64,000 bases of DNA from Adineta vaga (Eukaryota; Animalia; Rotifera). Shown here one piece after another: positions 2,342 to 42,999 of the stretch. The DNA lies in assembly GCA_021613535.1 (NCBI GenBank), contig CP075494.1, positions 13,020,001-13,084,000 on the forward strand, in the 5' to 3' direction. The notes below the pieces were generated by a model. It was given only the letters and a program-made list of their open reading frames with translations, did not search any database and was not told where the DNA came from. The stretch's first letter is position 1; each line of letters begins with the position of its first letter. A program made the translations under genes and the position numbers.

Positions 2342-3437
2342 TGACTTTGTTTTCAATGGGAAAATTGTAGATTAAAATTTCTGAAGAAGTTAAAAATGAT
2401 AAAATAGTGGAAGAAAACGACTTTTATAAATCTCTTCTGTCGTCATGATACTATATCTTTTTATGATTATATCACTTGTTGTTATCGAAAATCAACAAAA
2501 CTCAACATATAAATCGTTATCAATGCAATAAATGTAAAAATAAAAGGCACAAATGGAATGTTTTTTTATGATTCTAACAGTACTTGAATAAATCGGGCGA
2601 AAAACAGATGATTAGGGTATTTAAGGAGAATGTTGCCCCACGGAAAAATTTTTCAAGAAATACCATGATAATTAACGGTTTTTGAAAAAAACAAAAATCA
2701 TTATATTGATGGTATATTATTTCTGACATCTATCTGGTAATCTTTAACTTCTCTATGTCTGTAACCGATCCATTATCTTAAGATGATATTTTAACACCTC
2801 GGTCAATTCATTAAATACCACTATCTATTTTATATTTATTTTCTTCTGATTAGATTCGAACTTCTTACCGAGTGATTGCAGTCCACTAATTCTGTTGTAC
2901 TGTCCGATGATGTTCATACTAGTATCAGATGTGATAGTCTATCTAATCAGTGATAAAGAAGGTTCTCATTTAGACTGATATGTTTCATCTATTAGTAGAT
3001 TTATAAGAATCTTATAATTCCTAATAACTTTTATCTCATTTATAAGTTTATTAAATTTTCTGAAATATCAATGTTGATGATGTCCTATATTGTATATATA
3101 AAATCTTATTTATCGCTCATAGTCATGATAATTAAACTATAAACACAATCTATTCGAATAAAATCATTTCTGGGGAAAAATATACATTTATTAGGATCTT
3201 TAGTTGATGAACCATGGTATCATGTGTTCTGACAAAGTCTAACTATTTGAAATATTATCACAGTTCTGTCTATATGTAGATCTGTACGTCAAAACACATG
3301 AGAATACTACTCAATACACTTATGTTCATTTCATCAGTCAAAAAAACAGTCTTATGTCTATTTCTATCTCTGAACTTTTACTATCTCATGAACATATTAT
3401 TAACTTACAAGTGATCATCGCAGTGAAATCTGAATAA

Positions 3438-3713
3438 TACCCAAACAGATAAAATCGATAACAAAACGACGTTCTTATGTTGTTTTTTCCAACAAAACGT
3501 ATATTTGCTACGTAAAAAATATACTTTTGTACGCGTAAAAATGATTTTTTTTCTTCTCGACAGAAAATAGCCAATAACGGCGTTTTTACGCGCACAAAAG
3601 TGTATTTTTTCACGTGTTAAATATATGTTTTGTTGAAAAATACCAATATAAGAACGTTGTTTTTTTTCTCGCCAATCGCGTTTTTTTATCGATTCTGTCT
3701 GCCTGTATGAGTA
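3438..3713. mobile_element. MITE/foldback-like element with ~100-bp imperfect inverted arms
   Basis: Left arm tacccaaacagataaaatcgataacaaaacgacgttcttatgttg...tacttttgtacgcgtaaaaa matches the reverse complement of the right arm tttttacgcgcacaaaagtgta...aagaacgttg...ttatcgattctgtctgcctgtatgagta; TA at both ends. Confidence 0.7.
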
Positions 3714-4529
3714 TCTTTAAAATGTATTCATGTCTATTTTAGGTCAATATAATATTAGATTAATCGATAACGTCTATTTGAATTTAGTTGAATAATTTCT
3801 CCGCAATTTGACTTTCAGAACAAGTCTTTTTATCTCAACTCATTTCATTTGTCAAAAGAAAAAAAAACTGAATCTAACTTCAATCAGAAATATCTTTTTT
3901 TAAATTTAACTGTGATTATATGGATCAAAATTATTGTGATATACTATTATGACGAAAATCACATGAAATCATTTAGAACAATGATATATTCTTATATAAT
4001 AGAAAGTTTACAAAATATAATACCGTAATGAATGGTGGCTCTCGAATACCACAACTAATCTATGACTTATCAAGCTTTTTAAAATCGCGTCCTTCAGCGG
4101 TATCGTCTAAATTATTTTTCCGTGGTCGTTAAAAGTAAAAACAATTTTCTTATTCTTTTGTTTGAAGTCGTATTTTTGTATGAAGAACGAAAAGTTGGAA
4201 GAAAACATGTGTTTTTAATATCAGTATATACATTATACGCCATGTAAATCGCTGATAACATAGGATTCCAAGAATATTTTCTCATCTTCACTTATAGTAC
4301 ATATCAATGCGAGAACAAAAAGTAAAATAATTGACAGTACTATTTCATAAAATATTTCATATAAATTGTTTTCCATTTTATTCTAATATAATATTCAAAC
4401 AAAGAGTGAAAGATATCTTCTCAACGATAACACCCACCCACATCCTCAAGATATATCAATATTAAATTATAATTAAGTTTAAAAGACTTTTTAATAAAAA
4501 TGATAAATTATTTTTCATTCATATTGATA

Positions 4530-5534
4530 CAGGGGCGGTGGAACCTTTTCAAATCAGACAAGGCTCAGTATAAGATTATTGTTTACCCTTCAAAACTTTT
4601 ACATATCCCTCTGATATAGACTAAAATAAGTTCAATTAATATGTCGCTTTACATTATTGATTTGTTTATCTTTACTAAGGATAAAAGTTTTATAGCACAA
4701 AAATTATTTATTTTAATATAAATTATTTATCTAGAAAAAGCTTGTCTTTTGTCATTTGACGCGATAAATGTTGGCATTATTTGATATAAATCAGTTTCAA
4801 CGAGCTTTTATTTGTAAATATATGGTATCAAACAATAATTAAGTGGTGACTATGTGTTATAGAACTTCAAAGCGTAGTTTTCAATCGATTCAATGCGCTA
4901 AACTCAAGTTCAGCGGTTGCTGTAGTAACGGGAACAGTTGAATAAAGTTTAATCAATTTATCAAATTCTCTAAACATTTGTTTTCCAACAGCACTCAAAT
5001 TTAAGATTTCACAGATAGTCGAAATCTTTGTAATTTGTTTTATTTTCATCTTGTGAACTTGTTGGAGCATTACTTAAATTTACCAATGGAATTTCTCCTG
5101 TTGAAAGACATAATGCTGCAACTTTTGATTTTTTCGAAAACAATCTAGAATTGATCCACTGGATCGTTTCGATGTCATAGACTGATTATTATCTGAAATA
5201 TTGATATTATAAAGTAGGAGTGCACCTTTGTAGCTGGTTTTATTGTTTCTTGAGCGCATGACTCTATGATTGATCCAGTTTACATACCAACAAATGTAAT
5301 CAATATAAAATATGCCACTAGAGGCTGTGATGATACAATAAATGACTTTCATTTCAAGTCGCATTTCTAGTATTTTTATCGTAGTGTAGAGGTAATGACA
5401 CAAAAATACCTCCTATTGATACCAAAATAACGTTCGTTTGATCTGACAAAGTCAAATTTGATAGCGAAGAGATTTCAAAGGTTGAATTCGGGTAAGGCTC
5501 AAGCCTAACGAGCTTATAGGCTCCGCCGCCTATG
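4530..5534 (-). mobile_element. Non-autonomous, internally deleted hAT DNA transposon
   Basis: 8-bp direct repeat TATTGATA at 4522-4529 and 5535-5542; imperfect TIRs CAGGGGCGGTGGAACC / CATAGGCGGCGGAGCC (12 of 16 match); internal hAT C-terminal dimerisation remnant. Confidence 0.88.
4867..5070 (-). pseudogene. hAT transposase C-terminal dimerisation-domain fragment (ZMYM1-like)
   Basis: KLIKLYSTVPVTTATAELEFSALNRLKTTL resembles the hAT consensus LTxPVTTAxxERSFSxLxRLKTxLR; surrounded by stops. Confidence 0.8.
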
Positions 5535-6389
5535 TATTGATACACAGATCAATTCATAGAATAAGATTTCTTTTATATTACTTTTGCCGCGGCAGAGCGG
5601 CCGACCGGACGGCAAAAATTTTGAAATGCTCCCTAAAGCGTACATTGTAATATCCATAGCATTTGTTTTCAAAACAACTTTGATTATGAATGATGCAATT
5701 GAATTCAATGTTAGTATAAAGAACTATGTGAATAATAAAAGTTAGAGAAAGAGAAAGACAAAATATAATCAAAAAAGCAAATGTGTAAAGTATTTTGTTC
5801 ACTTCTAAATGTAATAAAATAATTGATACTATGTACTCTATATATCCAGAAAGAAATCGCGTTTGTTAGACTTCATTAATATTAATATAAAATTCGTGAA
5901 AATGCGCTAATAGCATCATCGACAACGCGTAGTAGATCATGAATTTGTATAAAACAAGAAAAATAGTACTGAGTGAAACATTGCGGCCTTATTCGAGTCT
6001 CAAAATGTCTAATAACGTTTCCATGAGCTTCGTACGATCTACCGTTCTTGAGATCATCGGAACACAATATATGGACGTTAAATGCGTACAAAACGAACCA
6101 ATAAAGATGATGAAGGTGACAGATTTGACGCTAGGTTGTAAAAAAGAGAATATATATAAGACAAAACAATTTTTATTCTGATTATTAAAAAACAAACATT
6201 GAGTACAATTCTAACATAAATAAAAAAAGTCAATATATGATATTTCTTTGTTTTTTTTATATCGTATATAAGGTAAACGTTCACAAAATGCATAATATTC
6301 AAGGACAGACTACATTAGAGGTTTATTGAGCTGAAAGCATACACGCACACAAAGAATAATGGCGATAAAAAAATTGTTTTGTATAAGAA

Positions 6390-9300
6390 CTATTCTAATT
6401 CCACTACTAAATCATCACCCTGAACTTGTTGTCCGATTTGTACATGAATTTTTTTGACTTTACCGTCGACGGCACTCTTAACAACTGTTTCCATCTAAAT
6501 GAGGAGATTGATATGAAGAAAAGCGATTAATAATTAAGAATTCTTAATACATACTTTCATCGCACTTAATACAATGATTGTATCACCTTTTTTAATTGTA
6601 TCACCTTCTTTTGTTTTAATATCAAGTACTTGACCGGGCATGGGCGCACCTAGATGACATAAACAAAGCAGTTACTACTTCGCATACGTTAGATCTTATA
6701 TCTAACTTACCTATTTGATTCTTTTGATTTTTATCAGCTTTTGGGTGAACTTTATGATCTTTAATAGCAGCTTTATCCTTTACTTTCATTGATCGTAATT
6801 GTCCATTGACTTGAAAGAATACTTCACGTTCACCAGTAGCTGTCATTAACTCACTGATTGCTAAGACAACAATATGAAGAACTTTGCCATGTTCAATTTC
6901 AATACTATACACAAAACAATAAATTATTGTTATTCGAATAGATGAACTTACTCCATCATTTCATTCAGTCGTGGACCAACAAAGAAAACTCGTGTTGGAT
7001 AGAGTTCAACAGGACCATATTGTTTTTTAAAATCAATATATTCTTCAAGAACTTTCGGAAACATAACATATGACATAACATCACATTTACGAATAATATC
7101 TTCACCGAATTTCTTTTGTAATTCTTTTTCAATTTTATCAAAATCTAACGGTTTCACGTCTGCACCTGGACGACCATCGATTTTCTTCTTTCCTTTTAAC
7201 ATTTGAGTACGAAGTGGTTCTGGTAATCCTCCATGAGGCTAAAAATCATCCAACTCTTCGTATTCAAAAACAAAAACATAAGAAATAATGCTTACTTGAC
7301 CAAGTTGACCTTGCATGAATTCTACCACACTTGATGGAAATGAAAGTTCGTCAGCACGTTTACGTACATCATCTGGAGTTAGATTATTTTGAACCATAAA
7401 CTGTGCAAGATCACCTACAACTTTGGATGATGGTGTTACTTTAATAATATCACCTAAAAGTTGATTTGCGTCAATGTAGGATTTTTTAACATTTTCAAAT
7501 TGTGAACCAAGACCAAGACTAAATGCTTGAAACTAAATATAAAATTTAATCGATTAATTTTTCTTTTCATTAATAAAAAATTATTTTTCTCTTTTACTTG
7601 AAGATTCGTGTATTGACCACCAGGTATTTCATTTTTATAAACATCAGCATTACCACTTTTCATTGTTGTTGTACATTCAAATGGAGCATAGAGTAAACGT
7701 GTTTGTTCCCAAAATGCTGAATATTCATTCACTTTATCCATGTTAATTTTTGTATCATGTTTCGTATTCTGTAATGCAGCAACCACACCACCCATCGTCG
7801 GTTGAGATGTCATTCCACTCATTGAATCAACAGCAACGTCGACAATATCAGCACCGGCTTCAAATGCTGCAAGATAATTTGCAACACCAGTACCTGCTGT
7901 ATCACTAAACAAAGAGACAGAGAGAAACGATGTCATGTCCTATGAAGAGTATTGAGAGTTTCTTTTACTGTGTATGTAAATGAATTGGTAGATCAGGATG
8001 TTTTTGTCGAATAGCATCGATTAACATTTTTGTAGCACGTGGTTTTAAAAGACCAGCCATATCTAAATGAAAACATAGATTATCTTTCATATTCTCATAC
8101 GTGTAATCATTCCTAACCTTTGATGGATAGTATATGTATACCCATTTTAACCAATTCATCAACAAATTTAGTATAATATTCTAAATTATATTTTGTACGT
8201 GATTTATCTGCAACATCACCTGTATAACAGACAGCAGCTGAAATCACTCCATTTGCTTTTCCCACAGCATCAATTCCAATTTTCATATTTGGTAAATAAT
8301 TCAATGAATCAAATACACGAAATATATCCATACCATGATCAACAGCCATTTGACAAAAACCATCAATAACATTATCAGGATAATTTGAATAACCAACAGC
8401 ATTTGCACCACGTAATAACATTTGAAATGGAATATTCGGAATAAGTTCACGCAATTCACTTAAACGATCCCATGGACATTCATGAAGAAAACGAAGAGCA
8501 ACATCAAATGTTGCACCTACATATTTTCCAATAGAATAAAAATTTCATCGAGCAAAAAAAACAACAATGAATTTTACCTCCCCAATTTTCTAAACTAAAA
8601 AATTGAGAGAAATTTTTTGCGACAAATGGAGCACATTTCTTTAAATCACGTGTTCGAACACGAGTGGCTAATAAACTTTGATGTGCATCACGCATAGTTG
8701 TATCCATTAATAGTGCTCTAACATGAAAACATAGTCATAACTTGAAAATAGACAGATATTTTTTTCGATTTTCTTACTGTGGATGTTTACGAACAGCTTT
8801 GGCAAAACCTTGTGGACCTTCTTGTTTTAGAACTTGACGCCAACCATTTGGAATCTCTTTCTTTTTTACATGTGGAAGTTCAGGTTTGATATCCATTGGT
8901 TTAACAGTTGTACCTAATGGTGTCAATGGACCATTGACTAAGACTTCTGAGAGATAGGAGAGTAACTTTTGTGCACGATTTTGTGCGGGTATAAATTTAA
9001 ATAAGAGTGGGTTTTCATCGAGAAAACTTGTGGTAATTGAACCTTCGAGAAATTGTTTATGTTGAAGAACATTTAATAAGAATGGAATGTTCGTTTTAAC
9101 ACCTATTTAGAAGAATTCATAAAACGTAATAATAATTATTGAGAATAATTACCTCGAATACGAAATTCTTGAAGTGCACGAACCATTTTTGCACATGCTT
9201 CTTGATGATTACGTGCATGAGCAATAACTTTAACTAATAATGAATCATAAAATGGACTAATAACAGCATCAGTATAAGCAGAAGCACTATCAATACGAAT

Positions 9301-10644
9301 ACCTAAGAAAAAATAGAGAGATCTAAGAACGTCATGAATCTTTATTCTGTTTTGAACTTACCAAATCCTTCTGCTGATCGAAATACATCAATACGTCCAA
9401 CATCAGGTGTAAAATTATTTCCAGGATCCTCTGTTGTCATACGACATTGTACAGCAGCACCCATAATTTTAATCTTATCTTGTTCGAGACCTAAATCAGA
9501 TAATCGTGCACCTTCAGCAATTTTAATTTGTGATTGAACAATATCAATGCCCGTTATTTCTTCTGAACATGTATGTTCAACTTGTAAACGACAATTAACT
9601 TCAATAAAATAATGTCGGCCTTGATTATCCAAAAGAAATTCAACTGTGCCAGCATTTTGATAACCAACATATTTAGCTAGACGAACAGCATCAGCTGTCA
9701 TACGTTCACGAATTTCAGGATCTAGATTCGTTGCTGGAGCAACTTCAATTACTTTTTGATGACGTCGTTGAACAGAACAATCTCTTTCATATAAATGTGT
9801 AACACTACCATGATGATCACCAATAACTTGAACTTCAATATGACGTGCTTGTGAAACAAGACGTTCAACAAATAATCGACCATCACCGACAGCAGCTTTC
9901 GCTTCTGATGAAGCGCGTTGAAAAGCTTCTTCTAATTCATTTTCTTTTGTTGCTACACGCATTCCACGACCACCACCACCGCGTGCTGCTTTAAGCATTA
10001 TTGGATAGCCATGTTCTTTAACAAACTCACGTACTGCATCGAGATCTTCAACAGCTTCAGTTGTACCGGGAATAATCGGTACATTTGCATCCAAAGCTAA
10101 AGAATAAGAAATACTATCAATATGTATATATGTAAATTTTGACTTTTGTTTTACCGGCTTGTCGTGCATTTAATTTATTTCCCATTCGATAGATTACATC
10201 AGGTGATGGGCCAACAAAAGTAATTCCAGCTTCTTGACAGGCTTTAGCAAAATCTCCATTCTCTGAAAGAAATCCATAGCCAGGATGAATAGCATCGACA
10301 TCATTCTTGACGGCGACTTTGATAATTTCTGGAATATTTAAATAAGCAGCAATCGGTGCTAAGCCTTTGCCAATTTTAAATGATTCATCGGCTTTAATAC
10401 GATGTAATTGTCCTTCATCTTCAGCCGAATAAATAGCTACTGTTCGAATATTAGTTTCTGTACATGCACGAAATACTCGAATAGCAATTTCACCACGATT
10501 AGCAACGAGAAGTTTATTAATTTTACGAAATTCCTGTTTATTCGACTGTTGTTTCGGCGTTTGAACGGATAATAATCGTTTACATGATACAAATGAAGAA
10601 CGAACACAAAAGGATGTTTGAAGAAGATTATTAACACGATACAT
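6390..10644 (-). CDS. PC: Pyruvate carboxylase, mitochondrial (multi-exon)
   Basis: Biotin carboxylase motifs [47 protein letters not shown]; carboxyltransferase [37 protein letters not shown]; split SAMK/M biotinyl motif; ends GDDLVVELE*; basic N-terminal transit peptide. Confidence 0.97.
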
Positions 10645-12279
10645 TTGTATCTGGAAGATAAAAGAAACAGATCATGAATTCTCTTTTGGATATTGACTTA
10701 CTGTATTATAAAAAAATATATCTAATCATATAAAAACTACTGATTTGCAATTATTTGTCAGAAGAGAAACATCTGGTTTCAAACGTACGTGTCGTCTAAA
10801 CAATACTTTTTTACTTTCCTTCTCGAATAAAACTTGTACTATAAATAAAAAAAAACATTATTTTTCTTCTCCTCTTATGTTTGTGGGTACATTTGCCTTC
10901 GCACGACGATCTAATATCTCGGCGTGTACTAACTAGAGCCTATATTTTTCCTTTCTATCTCAGAGTTTTGTCCTTCTCTACATCGTAATATAGAACCGCA
11001 GAGTTCGTCGAAAAAAAATCGATTCATACGAAGGTTCTCTCATCTTCAAAATTACGAATATCCTCTAAATTTTGATGATTAAATTAATCGAAAAAAGACC
11101 ACGATATGTTTCGAAAATAGTGTCATCTTAAATTACAATTTATATGTTCTTAAGATCATCATGACCTCAAGATTCCTCCTACGCTTATAGTTGTTGAAAA
11201 TACTTCGTTTCACCAATTCATCTTCTTTCGAAGATTAATAATTGAAAATATGTAAAGAGACAAAGAAACCAACGACGCACTTATTTTCTATTCATTACTA
11301 AAAAGAAAATTGTTAGTTTTTCCTTCTCTTCTTTTCTTCAAATTCTACTATGGCTTATTCTTTCAAACTTCTTTGACGTTAATAATCAACTGTAATACAT
11401 GTTACAGATAATCTTATTTCTTCACTTGCCTACTTGATTGAATTCCCTATATAATAAATGTTCTAGTTCTTAGAAAAATAAATATTAGACCAGTAAATAC
11501 TTATAGATATTGTTGCTGTTGTATATCAGGTGATGAAAATAGTTCTACAAGAGTATGTTTGTATTCTAAATGGATAGAGAGAGAGAGAGAGGGAGAGAGG
11601 GAGAACAGAAAAGGAAAAAGAAAAGAAATATGTTCGTTTCGGTCAGAACAGAAAAAAATAAGAAAGAAAAATAGAACACAAGACAGGAAACTATGGATGC
11701 CTGGAGCAATAGAGTGTTCGAAAATAGAAATTGCCTTGAGCAATTTATCATTTAATACCGCACGCCATCAAAAATAACAGCGGTTGAATACAAATTCTAG
11801 TTTTTTTTCCATGATATTATATAATGAATCTATCAATAGTAGATAAATAGCATTTGTGCTTTCTAAATAACTATCGTTTATTATCAATGTAAACAATAAT
11901 CAGTTGATACTGTTGACTGAACTAATATGTGAAGCTCTCATGCTCATTTCCTGTTATTGATAGTTAGTCAAGCAGTAAACGAATGTACATTAATCATAGA
12001 ATATAATATCGATTTTTCAATGTTCTTGATTTCTTTTTTATTATGCAAAAAACAATGTAAAACCTCTCACTCACATACAACACTCAAATATGACCTAAAA
12101 AACAACAAACAAAAGAAACCATCTCAATAAACTCGTTGTTTTTCTCTTCTTCGAATAATCACAACATAAGGGATTTTTGAACGATTTTTTTTATGTTTGT
12201 AAAATTTTTTTCAGGTTTAAAAAAGAAAAACAAAAAAAAAGTAACCTAGAAAGAAAGCACGATTGTAAACAATATATCA

Positions 12280-32100: not shown

Positions 32101-33531
32101 AATGAAAAAGATTTCAATCCATGCACTGTATATTGATTCTCAAAATGGGAACAAGGACTAAGTTAGTTATTATTTACTTTGATAACCGTTGATATTGATT
32201 TCATTGGGTGTACGACCATTTTTCATTGCAGCAAATTCTTTCAGTGGTGTATATTGATAATTAGCTTGAAACATACCTATGGATGTATTTTCGTCGTTCA
32301 TATGCGAGTTTCTTTGTTGTTGAATACGTTGAATTGACTTACTATCATCCATAAAATGACCTAGACATATAGAAAGACAAATAGTATATGATAAGAGATG
32401 TATAAAAACGAAATAACAAAATTGAACAGGAAAGAGAACATTTGAAAGGGATTTATATTTGTTCATATGATGATGATAAGCATAGATATAGATGAATATT
32501 CGATTGATTGTTCAATCAAACGAAGAAAAAAAAGGAATATTTACCGATTTGATAGATTTTGTGTATTTAGAAATGTGAAACCAATTTTTTTCCTGTCATT
32601 ACTCTATAAGGATTCTTTGTTTTTAACACACTCTTGAAGTGAAGGTGAATGTATAATAAATGAGAAAATTTAAATGAAAAATTACCGTTTGTCTGTGTAG
32701 AATTTTGTTCATCAATATCATTCGATTTCGTTAATTTTTGGGGTGATTGTTGTTGTTGTTGTTGTTGTTGTTTTTCTTCGAAATATCGAATCACATTCAC
32801 AACTGTTGTATCTTTTGTTGGTGTTGCATTTAATTTCGATGGAACATTAGCAAAATCACGATAATCAGCTTCCGAAGCATTCGGTGATTTAATTTTTATT
32901 CCACCATTTGTTTGTCGTTGATGAGAATTTGTTGTTGATTCGGTATTACTATCATCACATTTGTCACAAATAAATTGAGCATTTTCACCATAATGTGTAA
33001 TCATTTCGGGTTTTATGCAACGCCAATGATATGATCCGTCACAAATGCGACCTTCAGAGAACAAAAGAAAGTAAAAACTAGTAAATAGGCAAATAAATTC
33101 AAATCAATATACGAACAGATAAGAATTTCTTCAAAAGAATATAAAAGACGTTTGCAGATATTACATGTTGTTTGTGACGCTGTAGAATTTATTGGAGAAA
33201 TTCCATAGGAATTGATCGGAAGGGCTTTCGTTGATGTTGTCATTAATGAATTAGTTTCGGAAGATTTAGACAAAAGTGAAGATGATCGGGATAAAATTGG
33301 CGGAACTAAACCTAAAGAGAAAAAAAACATTTTTTCTATATTTAATAATACGTTTTTTTTTTCTCCTGAAGAATTTGTCAAATGTTTGGTCTCTTTCGAT
33401 GTTTTTTCATACACTCTCATATCTTCTGAAGACCTACATCGAACTGTCAACTACTACCATAAATGTACACACTTACATCGAACGCGAAGAACATAGTTTG
33501 GCAATTCTGGTAATGAAGTTGAGCTCATCAT
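29190..33531 (-). CDS. Multi-exon protein: PHD-like Zn finger, coiled coil, C-terminal PH domain
   Basis: CNIC...C..RICDGSYHWRC...FICDKC (C4HC3 spacing); coiled coil LELKLKNLENMIHQQ...; PH IKGWLRKQNR...RYYCVL...AINLNG...EAGQWATAIQGAI. Start and internal exons approximate. Confidence 0.7.
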
Positions 33532-35040
33532 TTCACGAAACAAAAGAAGAAAATAAAAAAAAACCGAGAAGAGATGAAATTTTCTTTTTCTATAATATAT
33601 TCGTTTTTACTATTCCTTATCATTAATCTCAATTCATTCCATTCATTGATGAAAAAGAGCATACAATTTTACGACTTTTTTTCACTTGAATGATGATAAA
33701 AATTGCTTTGTAAAGTCGTATAAACGTTCTTATTCGTTTTGAACTGATTTAAACCACATACCTTTTGCAAATATTTGAGACTTACAAAAGATCTGATGAT
33801 GAATTTCGTTCAATCATCAAAATCTATGAGAATGAAACAATATATGATTTATTTCGTTCGATTTCTACCGCGATTTTTCGTTCGTCGATTTCGTTGAGAA
33901 GAATTTTATGTTACTCTTCTATTCAAGTGTTTTTGTTTCTCAATCAATCCTGATTATTACTTTACTTTTACCCTCTGTCTTCATTTTTTTTTCTTTGCTC
34001 AACTACGAATGGAAAATTGTTCCATATGAATCATAACTAGAAGTTTTCACGAGACTTACCATGATCATCTTCATGTGATATGAATGAACAGAATAAAAAA
34101 AGAAAGAAAGAGAGGTCAATGTTTTACGTGCCAATTTCTTTCGCTTCTGATTTTTCGCCTTTTTCTCTTTGTATTCCTTTTCTTTTGAATTAAATATATA
34201 AGAACAGAAGAAGAAGAAGAAGAAATAGAGAATATATAAATGTATTGGCACTCACTATATTACTATTCTTTAGACTTGTACACCAATATATATATATATG
34301 TCAAAAGTAAGAACGAAAACGAAGTAGTATTTATTTTTTTTAAAGAAAGGCAAGCAAACGTTAGAACTACTACTAAATATACCGTATTGTAAAAGAAGAG
34401 AACATATTGAATGGCACTCATGTGCTTTTCGTTCTTTAGTATGACGACCACCTGTTGTCAATCGATAATCGCATATATAGAACTATAGATTGCATCAACT
34501 GAAGGTTCATGTCTTTCTCTTTTTTCATTGTTTGCCCACAATGAAACAGACATACATATCCATTATAAGAATAAAATATGAAACAAAGAAGAAATGAAAC
34601 TTTTTTTCAAAAAAAAAATAAATATTCACTTTCTTCTGACCTTCCCTGTCAAAGTACAATTAACCTTCACTTACCTTGAATAATAATCCAGCAGACAATT
34701 ACTTTTTTTCGATGATGATCGATTTAAACAAAGAAATTTCTTTTTTTTTCCTTTTTTCTTACAAAATATTTATTTATATAGCTTTCTCTGTTTCTATTTG
34801 ATGTGTCATACATTAGAAGGGATTAAAAGTCGTGACTAATATTTGTATATATATATATATATGTATATAAAGATTCTTTTTTCTTTTTATCAAATTTGAA
34901 GAAGGAAAAAATTACATAATAAACATTCAATAATGTCAAAGTAAAGTATAATCCACTTGAAGATTGGTGAAACATTTTACGTTGATAATTCATATATCAA
35001 ACATCGTTTTTACATAATCATAGAAAGAAAAACAGCAAAT

Positions 35041-37528
35041 TTATTCTGGAAGATCTTCATAAGAATTAGTTGTTAAATTCAGTCTTTCAATTTCATTCTG
35101 TCGTAATTCCCGAGAAAAGACATAGAATTCATCCAGTATACCGATAAATTGATTGGATACATCTAATCCATCTCCACCACTACAATTAGCTGTACCACGA
35201 TACATTCCAAGAGTAATTGTCATTGGTTCACCGGAATTATTGTTCAATTTAACTGCACTACTATTTCGACCTTGCCATGCAGTTTCTTTATAAAGTTGTG
35301 CTTGATTTGTTATACTCCAAGTAAATGCAACATGTACCCATCTATTACTTGTCATCGTCGATCCAAGAAGACTAACACCAATATTTGTACTTGTTGCATT
35401 CGGTAGATAAGCAACAAGTCGATTATCATTAGTTCGAATGCCGAGTACTAAAAGGCACGACTTCGAATTAGCAATAGTAAGAAATATGCCTGATTGATTA
35501 TCTGGACGAATCCATATAGCAACTGTAAACGCATGATCGGGTATATCCAAAACAGGAAATGCATTCGCTTCATAATAAGAACCGGATATATTGAAAGTTA
35601 AAGCAGTACGTACTTGACCAACTGTGGGTCGAGCGCCGGCTGAAGAAGCATTTCGACAATTTGGTCCATAATCAAGTAGCAAAGCATTATTAGTAGGTCC
35701 ATCAAGAGGATAATAAGCCGCAACAGTTGCGTCCCATAAAATTTGATCATTGCTTTTAGCTGTTGATGAAATTGATAATTGATCTATTGCACCAGTGAAA
35801 CCAGAGCCGATAGTAATAGTTACATTTGCATTTTGATTCACATCATTTGATACGTATCCTAATTGTTTTTCAACAGTTCCATCAATATAAATACTACTCG
35901 AACCACTCGCCTTATTATAAACAACAGCAATATGACACCATGTATTCAATGGTATGGTTGATGTCGAAACAATTCTATAGTTTTCGTTGATAACAAATGT
36001 TAAACGAACCGATTCGATATTTATTGACATTCCAGAAGAAAATTGAATAAGACTTGCATTTAACGAACCGTTCATCAAAAGGATAAATGCTTCAATGGTA
36101 AAAGTTTGATTGTTGAAATTGAAAGGATTCATTACAGATACTACACTAGAAATTGATCGATTGAACATAAGCGCTTCACCAGGAGCAACATAACCGTTCG
36201 TATATCTTTCAGCTTCTTTATTTATTTTACCATCACGAAGACAATATAGATCAAGAACAGTGTTGTCGAACGAATAGAAAGCGATAGCAATTGAAACAGG
36301 AGTAAAAACACTTATATTACTGTCATACTTTGGTAAAACTATAAAAAGCAAGGATATGCCAAAAGAAAACATAAAAAAAGCATTTTACGTACGTGTTGTT
36401 GTTAATGTTGAAACAGTTTCATCATTCTTTTTACGAGTAGCAAGTAGAGTAGTGAGAAGAACAATAAAAATAACCAAGAGAATTGCTAAAATTCCAGTAA
36501 AAATAAACTTTTTTCGTTTGTACCACGGTCTAGATTTGATAAATTTGAAATTATAAAAACATCTATCCAAAATGTGTGGTGTACTAACCGATTCTTTTTC
36601 TTATCATCAGAAGACAAGCTGTCATCCTATATATAAACATACAGATGAGTAGGTAAAATAATCAATTAGAATTCATTGTACTACTTTATGAAAATGATGA
36701 TGCTGATGACATGGAAATAATTGTGCATCTGAAATAGTGAAAAATATATTTAGTTAACTATGAATTAAAATACAACACTCTACCTGGAAAAGGTGGTTCA
36801 AGAAGAACATGTGGCGGCACTTTTTGTTGCAAATGAACAATATACAAATCAGTTGCCGGATTCAATCGTGATTTCACTTCAAGGTATGTTCCTGGCAACA
36901 GTAATATTTCATCTTCAGTCGTGAAATGTGAATGTGCACGAATCGTTCGACCATTGATTGTTTCAATCGAAAACAATGTTCGTGTTCCAACATTTCCCAA
37001 ATAGAGATCTGATTCAAGGACGCTCAATGATGTTGTGCATGATGAAAAAGCCCACCATGTCACTTGTGCACCAGGCGGATAATCAACACTGTGATCTTTC
37101 CGAACACCACGCCACACTGTTTGATGTGGTTCACATGGTAATTTAGCTAGTGCAGTAAGAAATAGTTTGAGATATCGAAACCATGGTCGAAGTTTTGTTC
37201 GATCGACTTGTTTCAGTGTTCGGTTGAGTTGTGCATAGAGACTGCCACGTGGTTTTTTTGGATCAGAATCCCATTCCATCGTATAGAGATGAATAGCAGC
37301 TGATTCATCTGGTGTTAGACCACCAGTGGGATTTTTCGTATTTTCTTTTGCAATCCAAATGTGTGCTTCGAGACGATCGACTAGATCCAAAAGTGGTTCA
37401 CATGCTTTTTCCAATGGCAATAATGGTTCATGAACATAACCTGCGATAGGTTGTAGCATTTGTTTTGGTTCATCACTAACTCCTAATATATATCGAGGAT
37501 TGCCTGTTTCTACTGTCTCTAACTTCAT
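35041..37528 (-). CDS. ART-TM-2xLamG type II membrane protein, copy A (753 aa by hand splicing)
   Basis: Exons 37528-36784, 36728-36685, 36626-36589, 36529-36393, 36338-35041, all GT-AG and phase-compatible (1,0,2,1). ART motifs TVWRGV, WAFSSCT, TEDEILL; TM FIFTGILAILLVIFIVLLTTLLA after PWYKRKK; LamG-like WCHIAVVY..IYIDG..FTGAIDQL and WVHVAFTW..FIGILDEFYVFSREL. Confidence 0.85.
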
Positions 37529-40500
37529 TTACTTCGATTCATCAAATGCAAAAACAAAAAATTAAATGATATTTGTATCAGAATGATAAACAAGAATTCG
37601 ACCGTGACTGATTTTATTTCATTTACGTGCTCTTCCTACTCAAAAGAACGAGAAAAAATACATGATACAAAACAAATTTATTGTCATTAATTTAATATCC
37701 AAATACGTACGTCAAGGTTATTATTTGTTCTTTAGTGTGAAAAATTGAATTCAACATACTACTGTGATCGATTTAAGTAAAAGAAAATAATAGTGATTCA
37801 TATTTGAAACTCATTCAATATCGAGTAATCAGTATTCATATAGAAAGAGAAATATATTATTTTATTCAATTACGTCTCAAAAATATCGTTAAATAATAAT
37901 TGTCATTAAATACACCTGTGTTTTCGTCATCTACAACAAACTAGCTCTCTCTCGCTCGATAATAAATTTCGACAAAGGTTAAACCAGCTAATCTAAAATT
38001 CAAATATTATTCAAAAAAATGAAATGTTTTTTAAAAATGAAGTGAAATAGTCATATTTACAGATGAAAAGTAATAAAAATATTTTTTTTATATATAACAT
38101 GGATCATCATCTTAATTTGATTATGTTTGAACGAGGACTTGCATATCATCACTTTGTAATTCCCGAGAAAATACGAAAAGTTCATCTAATGAACCCATAA
38201 ACGGTTGAGATGTATTCACTCCTTGTATACCAGCACAATTTGCTGGACCACTATACTTGCCTAATGTAACCGTCATTGGCAAACTATTATTACCACCACG
38301 AACATTATTAAGAGTATTTGCACTGGCAGATACACTTTGAAGATATGTCGATGTATATAGTTTCGCCAGATTTTTTGCACTCCAAGTGAAGGCTACATGT
38401 GTCCATGCATTTAATGGCATTTCTGGACCAATAATGTTCACACCTTCGCCAGTAGCAGTTGCATTTGGTAGATAAGCAACAAGACGATTTCGATCAGTTT
38501 GAAGACCAAGTACAAGTAAACATGTGTACGCATTAGCTATAGTAAGAAAGGCACCTGCTTGAGTTTCAGCTCGTATCCAAAGAGTAATAGAAAATGATTG
38601 TTGTGGCGTTCCTAATACAGTAAATCCATTTGCTTGGTAATAAGCATCAGAATGATTAAAATTCAAAGCATTAAAGTGCCATCCAAAAATTGTTATAACA
38701 CTTGCTGCACTTGCATTGAGACCATTCGGTCCTTTGTCGAGTAACCATTGTTCATCCATGGGATAATATCCAGCAGTAGTAGCATCCCATAAGACTTCTG
38801 ATGGAGATTTAGCTTTTATTAAAATTGATAATTGATCAATACAACCTTGCAAATCAGCACCGATAATAATAGATGAATTAGTATTATTTCCAGAGATGTC
38901 CAATACAACTGAAGATAATGATGTGATGATCGTTCCATCAATGAAAGTTGTAGCCATTTGATTAGATGTATTGTAAACAAAACCAAAATGATGCCATTGA
39001 TCTGGTGAAATTGCGATATTGTTCACAAGGCTGATATCTGACCCTATAGATGCTATCAGAAAACCATTAACGAGATTTAATTTAATGTTTGGTGTTAGTT
39101 GAACAAGCGTTGCATTCATTTGCGTTTGCTGTAACATAAAAAATCCTTCGATAGTGAAACTTGAACTAGTTTCCAAATCGAACGTCGGTTCTATATCAAT
39201 TCGAGTTGCATTGAATTGTGTTAAGACGACGGCTTTCCCATAAGGAACGTAACCTGTTATGTAACTAACGGATCCACCAATTACCTCTCCGTTTCGTCGA
39301 GAATATAGATCATTTATATCTCCATCAAATGCATAGAATGCATCCGCAATAGAAACTGGATTAGGAATCGAACCATTAGGATATATTGGTGCCAATGTTG
39401 CTAAAGATAAAAGAAAAAAAATTATTATCTGTATAGTAGCCATCTGAAATATATTTACTGATCTTATTTGGTGTAGATACTGTACTTGTTTGAGTTTGAT
39501 TTTTATTCTTGTTTCGAGTACCTAATACAGCACCCAACACAATGGCAAGAATGATCAATGCCAATACAGCAATTATGCAAAAAAGAATTTTCTTCTTTTT
39601 GTACCACGGTCTATAATAAAGGAGAGGAACCATTACTGTTTTTGTGATGTAAACATGATAAAATCCTTACGTAGAATCATCATAAAATTTGTCACTCAAA
39701 ACAGACGTTTTGCGCTATAAAGTAAAAAAAACAAATAGTTATAAATTTTTAAATAGAGTATGTTGAATATGAACTGAGAAACTACTCGTAGGTATGAGAG
39801 TTAACTTTTAGTTGGATGAAACTTACTGGATCTCGATCATTTTCTGGTCCTGGAAGAAGTTGAGCACCTATTTAAATCATTGATAAATGTATAAATTGAT
39901 AGGCGATCAAATAGATTCACTCTGAATTATACCTGGAAAAGGTGGTTCAAGAAGAACATGTGGTGGTACCTTTTGTTGCAAATGAACAATATACAAATCA
40001 GTTGCCGGATTCAATCGTGATTTCACTTCAAGGTATGTTCCTGGCAACAGTAATATTTCATCTTCAGTCGTGAAATGTGAATGTGCACGAATCGTTCGAC
40101 CATTGATTGTTTCAATCGAAAACAATGTTCGTGTTCCAACATTTCCCAAATAGAGATCTGATTCAAGGACGCTCAATGATGTTGTGCATGATGAAAAAGC
40201 CCACCATGTCACTTGTGCACCAGGCGGATAATCAACACTGTGATCTTTCCGAACACCACGCCACACTGTTTGATGTGGTTCACATGGTAATTTAGCTAGT
40301 GCAGTAAGAAATAGTTTGAGATATCGAAACCATGGTCGAAGTTTTGTTCGATCGACTTGTTTCAGTGTTCGATTGAGTTGTGCATAGAGACTAACATGTG
40401 GTTGAGTGGCTGCACCGTCCCATTCCATCGTATAGAGATGAATAGCAGCTGATTCATCTGGTGTTAGACCACCAGTGGGATTTTTCGTATTTTCTTTAGC

Positions 40501-40629
40501 AATCCAAATGTGTGCTTCGAGACGATCGACTAGATCCAAAAGTGGTTCACATGCTTTTTCTAATGGCAATAATGGTTCATGAACATAACCTGCGATAGGT
40601 TGTAGCATTTGTTTTGGTTCATCACTAAT
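36784..40629. repeat. Near-identical direct repeat of the ART exon (about 36784-37480 vs 39933-40629, offset 3149 bp)
   Basis: About 400 nt (36822-37222 vs 39971-40371) show no difference by eye; the ORF track reports identical 62-aa antisense ORFs at 36958 and 40107. Confidence 0.95.
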
Positions 40630-40677
40630 ACCAAGCAGATAGCGATGATTTATGAATTCAAAAAGACTCGTACCCAT
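38121..40677 (-). CDS. ART-TM-2xLamG type II membrane protein, copy B (753 aa by hand splicing)
   Basis: Exons 40677-39933, 39867-39827, 39714-39671, 39610-39459, 39400-38121 with the same phases (1,0,2,1). Same ART motifs; TM ILFCIIAVLALIILAIVLGAVLG after PWYKKKK; LamG-like WHHFGFVY..FIDG..GCIDQL and WTHVAFTW..FMGSLDELFVFSREL. Confidence 0.85.
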
Positions 40678-41615
40678 GATCTTTTTTTTACCCTTTCACT
40701 CTTATTTACTACCGTTATTTAATGAAATAAATAATAATCTATATGACTTTTTCCTTGTCGTTTTCGTTTTTACGATCAGTCATCCATATCCAATTAGATT
40801 ATTCAGTAGAACGAGCTATTTTGTGTATATTTATACATAAAATAACACATATTAAAGAGAAAAAAAACAGCTCTCAAGCGAGTAGGTGATATAGATACAA
40901 AAAAATTTCTTTTCCCCATCGATTACTTATCGAAGTATAACGTCATTTCAATTGCATCATAGAAAAATCTAAAAAAAGACTCTGTACAGGTATGCATAAC
41001 ATTGTATCATATCTGATAAAGTCGATGTTGTTTTTAGACATTTAGAAAGGAAAAAATACGTAAAATATTGCCGTTGAATAACATCTTCATACATTCATAA
41101 GTCATAAAATCAAGTAGATGAATGCATATCTCAATAATCAGTCACAGATGATAGAAAAAGTCAGTAATTATAAACCAATTTGTTCAAACATATGAAGTTA
41201 ATTCCTTCTTTTCTCTCATCTTAAAATGCAAATAAGTGCTAATGAATACAACTGACCATTTATTTTTTCTATCTTTTCTGTGAACTATTGACACATAGTT
41301 CGGGTCAAGCAAACATTAGACAGAGAACATCATTCGTTCGTTCGTTCTTTCATTCATTCATTCATTTTTTCTTCTAGACATGTCTTTTTTTTATTACTAT
41401 ATTCTCTCGGCAAAGAGAAAGTGATGATGAAATCTGATCTCATTGAACAGATTTCAATTAAGCACACTCTTCGTTCGCTCTCTATTTGCATAATCGGAAC
41501 CATCATCGGTCGGCACAGATATCTATATTGCAAATAAGAGAAGAAAAAAAAAGAAAGAAAATGATGCCACTATCATTTGCAAACGAACTAAACTAAAGCA
41601 TCAACGATCACAAGT

Positions 41616-42999
41616 ATGGTATTTACAAACATGATTTCGATCCGTCTACTTATTTTGTTTATTTCAATGAAAAATATTCTAACTATTGGAAATAATTCGT
41701 CAATCGATCGTCGTCTAATCCTTTCCTCGTGTCAGCAAGATGGACTTGGATTGGCAACAAGTAAGAAAATCTTCTTTTCTCTATTTTTCCATATCTTGAA
41801 AAACTATCACTATAACATCATTATATTGTTTTCGTTTTGCATCTTCTATTACCAATGATTTATTCATGAGAATATTAAACAATAGAATTGAACGTGAATA
41901 TCTGAATAAAGATTTCTCTTTACTGATGAAATTCTATTTTTTTGCCCCTCTAGCAATGATTGGTTATAAGATGTCTTATATACGCATGTCTTCCTTTTTC
42001 TTATTCACATCACTAAAAATTATTATAATTCTTCTGCATCACTATTTTTGGATGTCACTTACTATCGTCATACACGAGCATATATTAATATAAAAAAAGC
42101 GAGATACTGAAAAGAAAAAGAAGAAAAAAAGGAAACATTTTTTTTTCATCACATTGTCTCATGCTGTCATTCTAGTCAATTGTTATTATCATGAGCATTC
42201 TTAAGCCATAGTTTTTTGTTCCTAGTTTTAGAACATCCCCTCAAATAAGAAAATCTTCTTGTATTTTTATAGAGCAAAGCTTTGATTTGTTTTTCTTTTC
42301 TGTATAGTTTTCAAACCAATTGATCGACGTCATTTTTTTTACTTTTCCAATCAACCATCTTTGTCCTTGTCTTCTTTTTCATCATCATTACATCTATCGT
42401 ATTGTGAACATCAACAGACTACTTATTATTTACCAAGTGGTTTTTCTATCCTTCGTTCTTCACCACGACTTCCTTTTACTGACATTGCCGACAAGGAAAA
42501 TTCTTCGTCCTTTCATCGTCATCATAATACTATTCTTTCCGCTAGTGATCAATCGACATCTTCCAATAGTAATATGATCACTACTCTCATGCTATTATCA
42601 TCATCAATAACAACAACAACAGTTCAAGAAAAACATCTAGTTATCGATAAGGACAATAATCTTCATTTAACAACAATTTCGAATAATAGTTTATCTCATA
42701 CATCATTAGCAACAACATTACAAAATGGACAACGAACATTTTATATCTTGTTACTTTCAGGATGTGGTGCAGCTGGACTTCTGATTCTTTTAACGATTTA
42801 TACGATTATTAAATATTATAATCGTGATGAAGGTTCTTATAAGATCGATGAAAGTAAAAATTTCACTGCTGAAACTCATCTAGAACGTGCTGATAACAGT
42901 GGTCGTAGTGGTAAAACTACAACAACGAAACCACATCGTCAAAAATTATTAACACCTCATGAACAAACTCTTACTAATACGAAAGAATGGTATGTGTAA
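41616..42999 (+). CDS. Short neurexin-like type I membrane protein (2 exons)
   Basis: Exon 41616-41760 (hydrophobic leader, A|GTAAGA) splices in phase 1 to 42308-42999; S/T-rich stalk, TM, KYYNRDEGSYKIDES (band 4.1-binding motif) and C-terminal KEWYV (neurexin-type KEYYV PDZ ligand). Confidence 0.8.

What the first reader, a model, noticed from the sequence alone, without database searches (positions are those of the whole stretch)
36784..40629. Constant enzyme, variable sensor: ART exon homogenised while everything else is deeply diverged
Seen: the ART exons are identical over about 400 consecutive nt and otherwise differ by a few synonymous-looking changes, one small patch and the first ~12 codons. 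Similarity ends abruptly at the splice donor. Introns, linker exons and TM are barely alignable, and the ectodomains share only 21 of the first 46 aligned residues by my count. Inference: identity at silent sites cannot come from protein-level selection alone, so an old tandem duplication with recent, exon-restricted gene conversion (or exon replacement) is likely. This is the pattern expected of immune receptor families with a shared signalling module and diversified ligand binding.
Basis: partly seen in the sequence, partly recalled or inferred. Interest (0 to 1): 0.8.

Follow-up and report, generated by a model that had tools for sequence, protein, structure and literature searches.

The report
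Gene conversion homogenised one enzyme exon
Two neighbouring rotifer genes that split before bdelloid families diverged carry almost identical copies of their enzyme-coding exon, because one copy recently overwrote the other; this is a clean example of ordinary gene conversion in an unstudied gene family.

Summary
The window is Adineta vaga chromosome 5. It holds two tandem minus-strand genes, A (37528..35041) and B (40677..38121). Each has 5 exons and encodes 753 aa: an N-terminal ART domain, a TM segment and two LamG domains.

A 699-nt tract inside exon 1 (A 36781-37479, B 39930-40628) differs at 6 sites, all synonymous, plus one 25-nt patch. It includes a 401-nt identical run. Tract dS is 0.039 and dN is 0. 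In the LamG exon dS is about 1.0 and amino-acid identity is 44%. Introns are unalignable.

The tract is not an artefact of this assembly. Contigs from two independent short-read runs break exactly at its edges and carry it at about 2x depth.

LamG trees place A and B in separate ancient clades, and Rotaria genes fall inside the B clade. Forcing A and B to be sisters is rejected (p about 1e-111). In the ART exon A and B are sisters (100/99), and the no-conversion topology is rejected (p 0.0004). The homoeologous segment on chromosome 2 has a single B-type gene whose ART exon has dS about 0.85 to both.

Another bdelloid genome shows an independent conversion tract inside the same exon.

The best reading is a recent non-crossover interlocus gene conversion. 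The donor is unresolved. The immune-receptor reading is untested; LamG omega is 0.2-0.5.

The parts
36784..37528 (-). Gene A exon 1 (745 nt, ends in phase 1; donor GT at 36783-36782): ART domain
   Evidence: ORF and Pfam ART PF01129, E 1.7e-11. R140, S162-S163 and E205-D-E207 align with the R / S / ExE positions of rat ART2.2 and are invariant in 13 orthologs.
36781..37479 (-). Conversion tract, copy A (699 nt)
   Evidence: 6 synonymous differences plus the patch against copy B. dN 0, dS 0.039. Logan contigs of runs X1 and X3 span this interval or start at its 3' edge, at about 2x depth.
39930..40628 (-). Conversion tract, copy B
   Evidence: Ungapped offset of 3149 nt from copy A. Flanking contigs end at 39959 and start at 40599, i.e. 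a k-1 overlap into the tract.
37244..37268 (-). Unhomogenised patch inside the tract, copy A (codons 87-95); the B counterpart is 40393-40417
   Evidence: 13 of 25 nt differ and 7 of 9 residues differ. It is the most variable, indel-bearing segment of the exon across species.
37480..37528 (-). Unconverted 5' end of exon 1, copy A (codons 1-17); the B counterpart is 40629-40677
   Evidence: B shares the 'FEFIN' N-terminus with C, X1/X2 and A. steineri. A shares an acidic, T-rich N-terminus with A-type orthologs X3, Y, Z and W.
36685..36728 (-). Gene A exon 2 (44 nt, linker)
   Evidence: Splice sites read from the sequence. Phases match genes B and C.
36589..36626 (-). Gene A exon 3 (38 nt, linker)
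   Evidence: AG/GT boundaries, reading frame kept.
36393..36529 (-). Gene A exon 4: RPWYKRKK, a 23-residue hydrophobic TM segment and a Ser/Thr-rich stalk
35041..36338 (-). Gene A exon 5: two LamG (Laminin_G_3) domains, to the stop codon
   Evidence: Pfam PF13385 with 2 stretches, E 1.4e-30. 14 N-x-S/T sequons. Falls in the A-type clade, 98/99.
39933..40677 (-). Gene B exon 1: ART domain
   Evidence: Identical to the N-terminus of the annotated A. vaga protein P0033.
38121..39867 (-). Gene B exons 2-5 (39867-39827, 39714-39671, 39610-39459 with the TM segment, 39400-38121 with 2x LamG)
   Evidence: My splice model gives 753 aa and equals NCBI I4U23_026129 (P0033) residue for residue. Pfam Laminin_G_3 x2. 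Falls in the B-type clade.

Best explanation
Genes A and B are ancient tandem paralogs in Adineta vaga. Each most likely encodes a type-II membrane protein: a cytosolic N-terminal R-S-ExE mono-ADP-ribosyltransferase domain, short linkers, one TM helix, a Ser/Thr-rich stalk, and two glycosylated extracellular LamG domains.

Recently, on a scale below the species' mean allelic divergence, a non-crossover homologous-recombination event copied about 700 nt of exon 1 from one gene into the other. The event was an interlocus gene conversion, most simply repair of a break in the ART exon using the paralog 3.15 kb away as template.

The tract lies wholly inside the exon. It starts at codon ~17 and ends at the splice donor. 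It skips, or was restored at, a 25-nt hypervariable patch, so it was either one discontinuous tract or two adjacent tracts of similar age.

Shown: the tract, its edges, its silent-site identity, the age of the duplication, the discordant trees, an independent tract in another species, and purifying selection on both copies since the event.

Inferred: the repair mechanism; that the tract stays in the exon because only the selectively conserved ART exon keeps enough similarity for pairing and resolution; the membrane topology; and enzymatic activity.

The donor copy is unresolved.
For: 1. Silent-site contrast. The tract (codons 18-248 without the patch) has dN 0 and dS 0.039. The same codons against homoeolog C have dS 0.83-0.87. 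The LamG exon A-B has dS 1.0, dN 0.51 and 44% aa identity.

2. Site patterns in exon 1: A=B≠C at 149 sites, against 19 (A=C≠B) and 14 (B=C≠A).

3. Trees. In the LamG exon the A-type clade has 98/99 support and the B-type clade, including four Rotaria proteins, has 94/94 and 96/97. A+B as sisters is rejected, p-AU 8.6e-112. An origin of A within Adineta after the split from Rotaria is rejected, p 0.002. In the ART exon A+B are sisters at 100/99, and A grouped with its LamG orthologs without B is rejected, p 0.0004.

4. Synteny. C2:4357076-4379190 is collinear with window 48098-29652 and holds one B-type gene.

5. Non-crossover. Both genes keep lineage-specific N-termini, introns and downstream exons.

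6. Not an artefact of this assembly. Logan contigs from runs of 2015 and 2022 break at the tract edges (…36810 | 36781-37479 | 37450-39959 | 40599…). The tract is at 59 against 32-37 in X1, and at 424 against 168-216 in X3.

7. Recurrence. In L058, from another bdelloid, X1 equals A-type X3 over exon nt 569-728 (dS 0.048) but equals B-type X2 elsewhere, introns included.

8. All 6 differences accumulated since conversion are synonymous. The synonymous-site fraction is about 0.24, giving P about 2e-4, or about 3e-3 if the three clustered changes count as one event.

9. Tract divergence is 6 of 674 nt, or 0.9%. Mean allelic heterozygosity is 1.7% and homoeolog divergence is about 13% (PMC8494291).
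Against: - No long read spanning both copies was examined. The short-read contigs collapse the tract, so the phase of the six differences, and the state of the second haplotype, are unknown.
- The direction of transfer is unresolved: p-AU is 0.07 for an A-type donor and 0.19 for a B-type donor.
- The unconverted patch has no proven explanation. Candidates are two tracts, patchy mismatch repair, or re-diversification.
- Longest exact runs between unconverted ART exons (23-26 nt) are only slightly longer than in LamG exons (16-22 nt). 'Homology-limited' therefore rests mainly on overall identity.
- RNA evidence for gene A is weak: low-depth contigs over its 3' end in a run only guessed to be RNA.
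Confidence: 0.9

Rival explanations
1. Assembly or polishing artefact: reads from one ART exon were used to 'correct' the other, or one copy was pasted in during assembly.
For: A 401-nt identical repeat 3.15 kb apart is the kind of place where polishing can homogenise copies. The A. steineri short-read assembly is visibly damaged at this exon, with an internal duplication and an N gap.
Against: Contigs built independently from two other read sets (2015 and 2022) break exactly at the tract edges. They carry the tract at about 2x depth and join it to both sets of unique flanks. No diverged alternative ART contig at 90% likeness or better appears. All six residual differences are seen in those data, three in each run (36815/36818/36821 in X3; 37349 and 37412 in X1).
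Confidence: 0.02
2. A recent whole-gene duplication followed by very fast divergence of everything except the ART exon, with no conversion.
For: LamG exons do evolve faster than the ART exon at the protein level: omega 0.2-0.46 against 0.035-0.17.
Against: Synonymous divergence in the LamG exon is saturated (about 1.0), and the introns are unalignable. A and B each have closer LamG orthologs in other species (62% and 68% aa) than they have in each other (44%). The AU tests reject this history.
Confidence: 0.01
3. Silent-site identity is maintained by selection on the nucleotide sequence itself (codon usage, RNA structure, an embedded element) rather than by copying.
For: None found. Identity at third positions is the only hint.
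Against: The same codons have dS 0.83-0.87 against homoeolog C and 0.9-1.1 against orthologs in another species. Silent sites of this exon are therefore free to change.
Confidence: 0.01
4. Conversion occurred, but its restriction to the ART exon is selected. Tracts that overwrite LamG exons are purged because A and B need different ligand specificities. Keeping the two catalytic modules identical is favoured, for example because they share a substrate or regulator.
For: Tracts confined to the ART exon are seen independently in another species. A 98.7%-identical tract over an ART exon with 76-77% flanks occurs in another adjacent ART pair in this genome. dN is 0 since the event. The ART tree fails to recover the A/B split that the LamG tree shows, with borderline p 0.048-0.056.
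Against: Limited homology explains the same pattern without selection. There is no gene-wide positive selection on LamG. The tract leaves a patch and the N-terminus unhomogenised, which is odd if identity as such were selected. The evidence for older exchanges is only borderline.
Confidence: 0.25

Closest known systems
Interlocus (ectopic) gene conversion between tandem paralogs with exon-limited tracts, e.g. primate Siglec-5/14 and Siglec-11/16 paired receptors, HBG1/HBG2, RHD/RHCE and red/green opsins (from my own knowledge, not re-checked here)
   Same: A short tract of near-identity, silent sites included, in old tandem duplicates. It is flanked on both sides by diverged sequence, gives discordant trees for tract and flanks, and recurs in related species.
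   Different: In the Siglec pairs the ligand-binding exons are homogenised and the signalling tails differ. Here the intracellular enzymatic exon is homogenised and the ectodomains stay apart. The host is a bdelloid rotifer and the gene family is uncharacterised.
Gene conversion and loss of heterozygosity in Adineta vaga (Simion et al. 2021, PMC8494291; Flot et al. 2013, cited there)
   Same: Same organism. Homologous recombination and conversion signatures are documented genome-wide.
   Different: Those reports concern allelic or homologous-chromosome exchange and large LOH tracks. This is a 0.7-kb exchange between non-allelic paralogs 3 kb apart.
Vertebrate R-S-E ecto-ADP-ribosyltransferases (Pfam ART PF01129; rat ART2.2, PDB 1gxy)
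   Same: Pfam match above the curated cut-off. The R, S-x-S and E-x-E positions align and are conserved.
   Different: There is no signal peptide or GPI anchor. The domain sits N-terminal to a TM helix, so it is probably cytosolic, and it is fused to two extracellular LamG domains. Sequence similarity to solved ARTs is low (E 0.003).

Membership tests
Interlocus non-crossover gene conversion | A tract with anomalously low divergence, synonymous sites included, bounded on both sides by diverged sequence | tested here: met
   dS 0.039 against about 1.0. Edges at 37479/37480 and 36781/36780. Longest identical run 401 nt against a maximum of 44 in 10,000 shuffles.
Interlocus non-crossover gene conversion | Significant phylogenetic discordance between the tract and the rest of the gene | tested here: met
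   In the ART exon A+B group at 100/99 and the alternative is rejected at p 0.0004. In the LamG exon A+B as sisters is rejected at p 8.6e-112.
Interlocus non-crossover gene conversion | Both flanks keep their own lineage, so there was no crossover or chimera and gene number and order are unchanged | tested here: met
   N-terminal codons, introns and exons 2-5 stay A-type or B-type. The order B then A is the same in L058, L059 and L060.
Interlocus non-crossover gene conversion | The tract is real in independent sequence data | tested here: met
   Two independent short-read runs. Long-read phasing was not available.
Interlocus non-crossover gene conversion | Donor and acceptor identified | tested here: inconclusive
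   The AU tests reject neither direction: p 0.07 and p 0.19.
R-S-E mono-ADP-ribosyltransferase (Pfam ART) | Profile match above the curated threshold | tested here: met
   PF01129 at 44.3 and 43.5 bits against a cut-off of 22.3.
R-S-E mono-ADP-ribosyltransferase (Pfam ART) | Catalytic R, S-x-S and E-x-E residues | tested here: met
   R140, S162-S163 and E205-D-E207 align with ART2.2 and are invariant in 13 sequences.
R-S-E mono-ADP-ribosyltransferase (Pfam ART) | ART fold | tested here: inconclusive
   The AlphaFold model from a shallow alignment has pLDDT 44. Only the secondary-structure order (helices, then strands) is compatible.
R-S-E mono-ADP-ribosyltransferase (Pfam ART) | ADP-ribosylation activity | not testable with these tools
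   Needs biochemistry.
Vertebrate-type ecto-ART | Secreted or GPI-anchored extracellular enzyme with an N-terminal signal peptide | tested here: not met
   The N-terminus is hydrophilic. The ART domain precedes a basic RPWYKRKK motif and the TM helix. Sequons number 1 in ART against 11-14 in LamG.
Immune receptor family with a constant signalling module and diversifying sensor | Diversifying selection on the sensor domain | tested here: not met
   Pairwise LamG omega is 0.18-0.50 and 0.20-0.43 in unsaturated pairs. Site models were not run.
Immune receptor family with a constant signalling module and diversifying sensor | Role in defence (inducibility, ligand, phenotype) | not testable with these tools
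   No functional data. No paper on these genes was found.

The most novel reading that the evidence does not exclude
The ART exon may be a recurrent conversion hot-spot across the very large bdelloid ART family, which has at least 151 ART exons in this genome. Catalytic modules of neighbouring genes would then evolve in concert within each species while their sensor exons keep ancient orthology. Selection might maintain this to keep paired receptors' effector domains matched to a shared target or regulator.
Probability: 0.2. Interest if true: 0.6.

Novelty: new member of a known kind. Interest (0 to 1): 0.4.

Why it matters
This is an unusually clean, datable example of ectopic gene conversion in an asexual bdelloid rotifer.

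- The duplication predates the split of bdelloid families.
- The tract is younger than the average allelic divergence.
- The event can be set against a homoeolog and against orthologs in other species.

It shows that homologous repair in A. vaga acts between non-allelic copies at kilobase range, not only between homologous chromosomes.

It also bears on method. ART-exon trees in this very large family will mislead about gene history, and short-read assemblies break at this exon.

The encoded proteins are uncharacterised. A probably cytosolic ART coupled through one TM helix to LamG ectodomains would be worth a functional test. That architecture, however, is a separate finding, and the mechanism described here is textbook.

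Tried and rejected
- Structure of the ART exon: the AlphaFold model from a 13-sequence alignment was too poor (pLDDT 44) for a fold search, so none was run.
- Donor direction: a few 'A-type' residues in the tract looked diagnostic. A. steineri and Rotaria B-type genes share them, and the AU tests are inconclusive.
- Older concerted evolution of the ART exon across species: only borderline, p 0.048-0.056.
- Homology-run argument: the longest exact matches in unconverted ART exons are not much longer than in LamG exons.
- Run X20 ('organism B'): a few adaptor-bearing 151-nt pieces with only C>T changes, uninformative.
- Other adjacent ART pairs:
  - C3:6.275/6.289 Mb is a plain 92% inverted duplication.
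  - C2:0.70-0.72 Mb is a 94% whole-gene duplication.
  - The two C1 regions have no internal repeat.
  - Only C6:0.316/0.319 Mb resembles the present case.
- Literature: no paper on rotifer ART-LamG genes in the searchable library.
- The joined (spliced) protein models were never sent to a search tool.
Full report
**What is there**

The window is G000:C5:13020001-13084000 of a 100.8-Mb, six-contig, roughly 31% GC genome. A hit to NCBI protein I4U23_026129 [Adineta vaga] identifies the organism. The assembly layout matches the AV20 assembly of Simion et al. 2021: six chromosome pairs and paleotetraploidy (PMC8494291).

Two genes lie head-to-tail on the minus strand.
- Gene B: 40677..38121.
- Gene A: 37528..35041.

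I read the same five-exon structure with identical intron phases in both genes.
- Exon 1 is 745 nt and matches Pfam ART PF01129 (E about 1e-11).
- Exons 2 and 3 are two small linker exons.
- Exon 4 encodes a basic motif, a TM helix and a Ser/Thr-rich stalk.
- Exon 5 is about 1.29 kb and encodes two Laminin_G_3 domains.

Each model gives 753 aa. My model of B equals the annotated protein P0033 residue for residue.

The ART domain has no signal peptide. It keeps R140, S162-S163 and E205-D-E207, which align with the R / S / ExE positions of rat ART2.2 (1gxy, E 0.003) and are invariant in 13 orthologs. The LamG exons carry 14 and 11 N-x-S/T sequons, against 1 in each ART exon. The likely topology is therefore type II, with the enzyme inside the cell and the LamG domains outside. 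This is an inference.

**Check of the observation**

The two exon-1 copies align without gaps at an offset of 3149 nt.
- The longest identical run is 36822-37222, 401 nt.
- The high-identity tract is 36781-37479 in A and 39930-40628 in B.
- Inside it there are six single differences, all synonymous, and one patch (37244-37268, codons 87-95) where 13 of 25 nt differ.
- Upstream, codons 1-11 are unrelated and codons 12-17 partly differ.
- Downstream, identity ends three bases into intron 1.
- Elsewhere a global alignment is near the noise level for AT-rich DNA, at 20-43 matches per 60 nt.
- In 10,000 shuffles of the difference positions the longest identical run never exceeded 44 nt.

**Silent sites**

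| Comparison | dN | dS |
|---|---|---|
| Tract, A-B (codons 18-248 without the patch) | 0 | 0.039 |
| Same codons, A or B against homoeolog C | 0.14 | 0.83-0.87 |
| Same codons against another bdelloid species | not quoted | 0.9-1.1 |
| LamG exon, A-B (44% aa identity) | 0.51 | 1.0 |

Silent sites of this exon are therefore free to change, and the duplication is old. Only copying explains the tract.

**Is it an assembly artefact?**

Logan contigs from two other read sets, dated 2022 and 2015, break exactly at the tract edges:
- 35000-36810;
- 36781-37479 in X1, and 36781-37318 in X3;
- 37450-39959;
- 40599 onwards.

The shared piece is at 59 against 32-37 in X1, and at 424 against 168-216 in X3, i.e. 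about 2x. No diverged alternative ART contig appears. Both sets of flanks therefore join the same sequence in independent data.

A run guessed to be RNA has low-depth contigs on the 3' ends of both genes, which is weak evidence of expression.

**Age of the duplication and tree discordance**

The syntenic homoeologous segment on contig 2 is collinear on both sides: C2:4357076-4363496 matches window 48098-42799, and C2:4375882-4379190 matches window 33052-29652. It holds a single gene, C, with the same exon structure.

LamG identities are 51% for B-C, 44% for A-B and 39-41% for A-C. The next paralogs in the genome reach only about 32%.

A protein search with A's ectodomain found closer relatives in other bdelloid assemblies and metagenomes, plus full-length ART-LamG proteins of Rotaria. 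I fetched loci L058-L064.

The LamG tree has two clades:
- an A-type clade of A, L062, L064, X3, W, Y and Z, with 98/99 support;
- a B-type clade of C, then four Rotaria proteins, X1/X2, and B with A. steineri, with 94/94 and 96/97 support.

Two alternative histories are rejected on the LamG exon:
- A and B as sisters, p-AU 8.6e-112;
- A arising within Adineta after the split from Rotaria, p 0.002.

The gene order, B-type upstream and A-type downstream, is the same in L058. L059 and L060 have an intact A-type gene with remnants of a B-type gene upstream.

In the ART exon the picture is opposite:
- A and B are sisters at 100/99.
- The no-conversion topology is rejected, p 0.0004.
- A=B≠C holds at 149 sites, against 19 and 14 for the other two patterns.

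Both genes keep lineage-specific N-termini. B, C, X1/X2 and A. steineri share 'FEFIN'. A shares an acidic, T-rich start with X3, Y, Z and W. The event was therefore a non-crossover replacement, not a chimera produced by unequal crossing-over.

**Recurrence**

In L058, from another bdelloid species, X1 and X2 are recent whole-gene B-type duplicates, with ART dS 0.016-0.067 and alignable introns. Over exon nt 569-728, however, X1 is identical to the A-type gene X3. For codons 187-248, dS is 0.048 for X1-X3 against 1.7 for X1-X2. X1's intron is again X2-like. This is an independent tract inside the same exon.

In this genome another adjacent ART pair, at C6:315.7-319.7 kb, has a 1064-nt tract at 98.7% over the ART exon with flanks at 76-77%.

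With A, B and X1 removed, the ART tree still fails to recover the A/B split. The rejection is only borderline, p 0.048-0.056.

**Mechanism**

The most economical reading is repair of a break in one ART exon using the paralog 3.15 kb away as template. The tract is confined to the only stretch that purifying selection has kept similar: about 78% nt between unconverted copies, against 55-59% elsewhere.

The patch is the most variable, indel-bearing loop of the exon across species. A's version resembles A-type orthologs and B's resembles the A. steineri B-type gene. This suggests it was never converted, through two tracts or patchy repair, but 9 codons cannot prove it.

All six differences since the event are synonymous, with P about 2e-4 (about 3e-3 if the three clustered ones count as one event). 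Both ART copies are therefore under purifying selection.

Tract divergence is 0.9%, below the 1.7% mean heterozygosity reported for A. vaga.

The donor is unresolved.

**The 'variable sensor' reading**

LamG exons evolve faster than the ART exon. LamG omega is 0.20-0.43 in unsaturated pairs, against 0.035-0.17 for ART. Gene-wide omega stays below 1. Their deep divergence mainly reflects age.

The ART exon type is hugely expanded, with at least 151 matches in the genome. Only A, B and C, however, combine this ART subfamily with this LamG subfamily.

An immune role is possible but untested. No paper on these genes was found.

- The read call used 5901 letters.
- Spliced models were searched exon by exon by reference only, and the joined step was left out.
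- No step needed referral.

**Verdict**

The core interpretation, an old tandem duplicate with a recent gene conversion confined to the exon, is supported at about 0.9 confidence. This is a new, well-documented instance of a known process in an unstudied gene family.

Noticed in passing
L065 (G000:C6:312000-321999) 3736-4799 vs 6599-7657: An inverted adjacent pair of ART genes has a 1064-nt tract at 98.7% identity centred on the ART exon, while the flanks are 76-77% identical. This is possibly a second ART-exon conversion in this genome.
   Followed up: partly
L058 (ENA ERZ26165376 ctg355622) 984-11275: Another bdelloid genome has three tandem ART-LamG genes: X1 and X2 are B-type and X3 is A-type. 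X1's LamG open frame is shorter (340 aa) and X1's ART exon is an X2/X3 mosaic.
   Followed up: yes
L059 7956-8243; L060 6240-8302: Fragments of a degraded B-type gene (pieces of ART and LamG in broken frames) lie upstream of an intact A-type gene. This points to lineage-specific loss of one member of the pair.
   Followed up: partly
L061 (A. steineri CAJNON010000082.1) 285-1300 and 10001-10650: The short-read assembly has an internal duplication of about 70 codons inside one ART exon and an N gap at the start of the other. This looks like assembly damage at a near-identical repeat. ART-TPR genes are interleaved with the ART-LamG genes.
   Followed up: no
L032 6692-9973 (G000:C2:4369691-4372972): A multi-exon gene downstream of gene C on contig 2 has no tblastx counterpart above 60 bits in the syntenic part of the window. 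This suggests differential gene loss between the homoeologous segments.
   Followed up: no
genome-wide: At least 151 ART-exon matches to this domain occur in the 100.8-Mb genome, and this is a lower bound. Many sit in open frames of 250-600 aa, so the expansion is very large and has varied C-terminal partners.
   Followed up: no
window 42361-42999 (+) and 32567-33064 (-): The pair is flanked by a syndecan-like TM gene and a PHD-containing gene. The same neighbours appear in L059 (syndecan-like), on contig 2 (TM gene in the syntenic position), and in A. steineri L061 (PHD/PH gene).
   Followed up: partly
window 35840-35974, 37077-37621, 40808-40900 (run X20): A run labelled as a different organism holds a few 151-nt adaptor-bearing pieces of this locus whose only differences are C>T. 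This may be bisulfite-type or damaged DNA of the same species.
   Followed up: no
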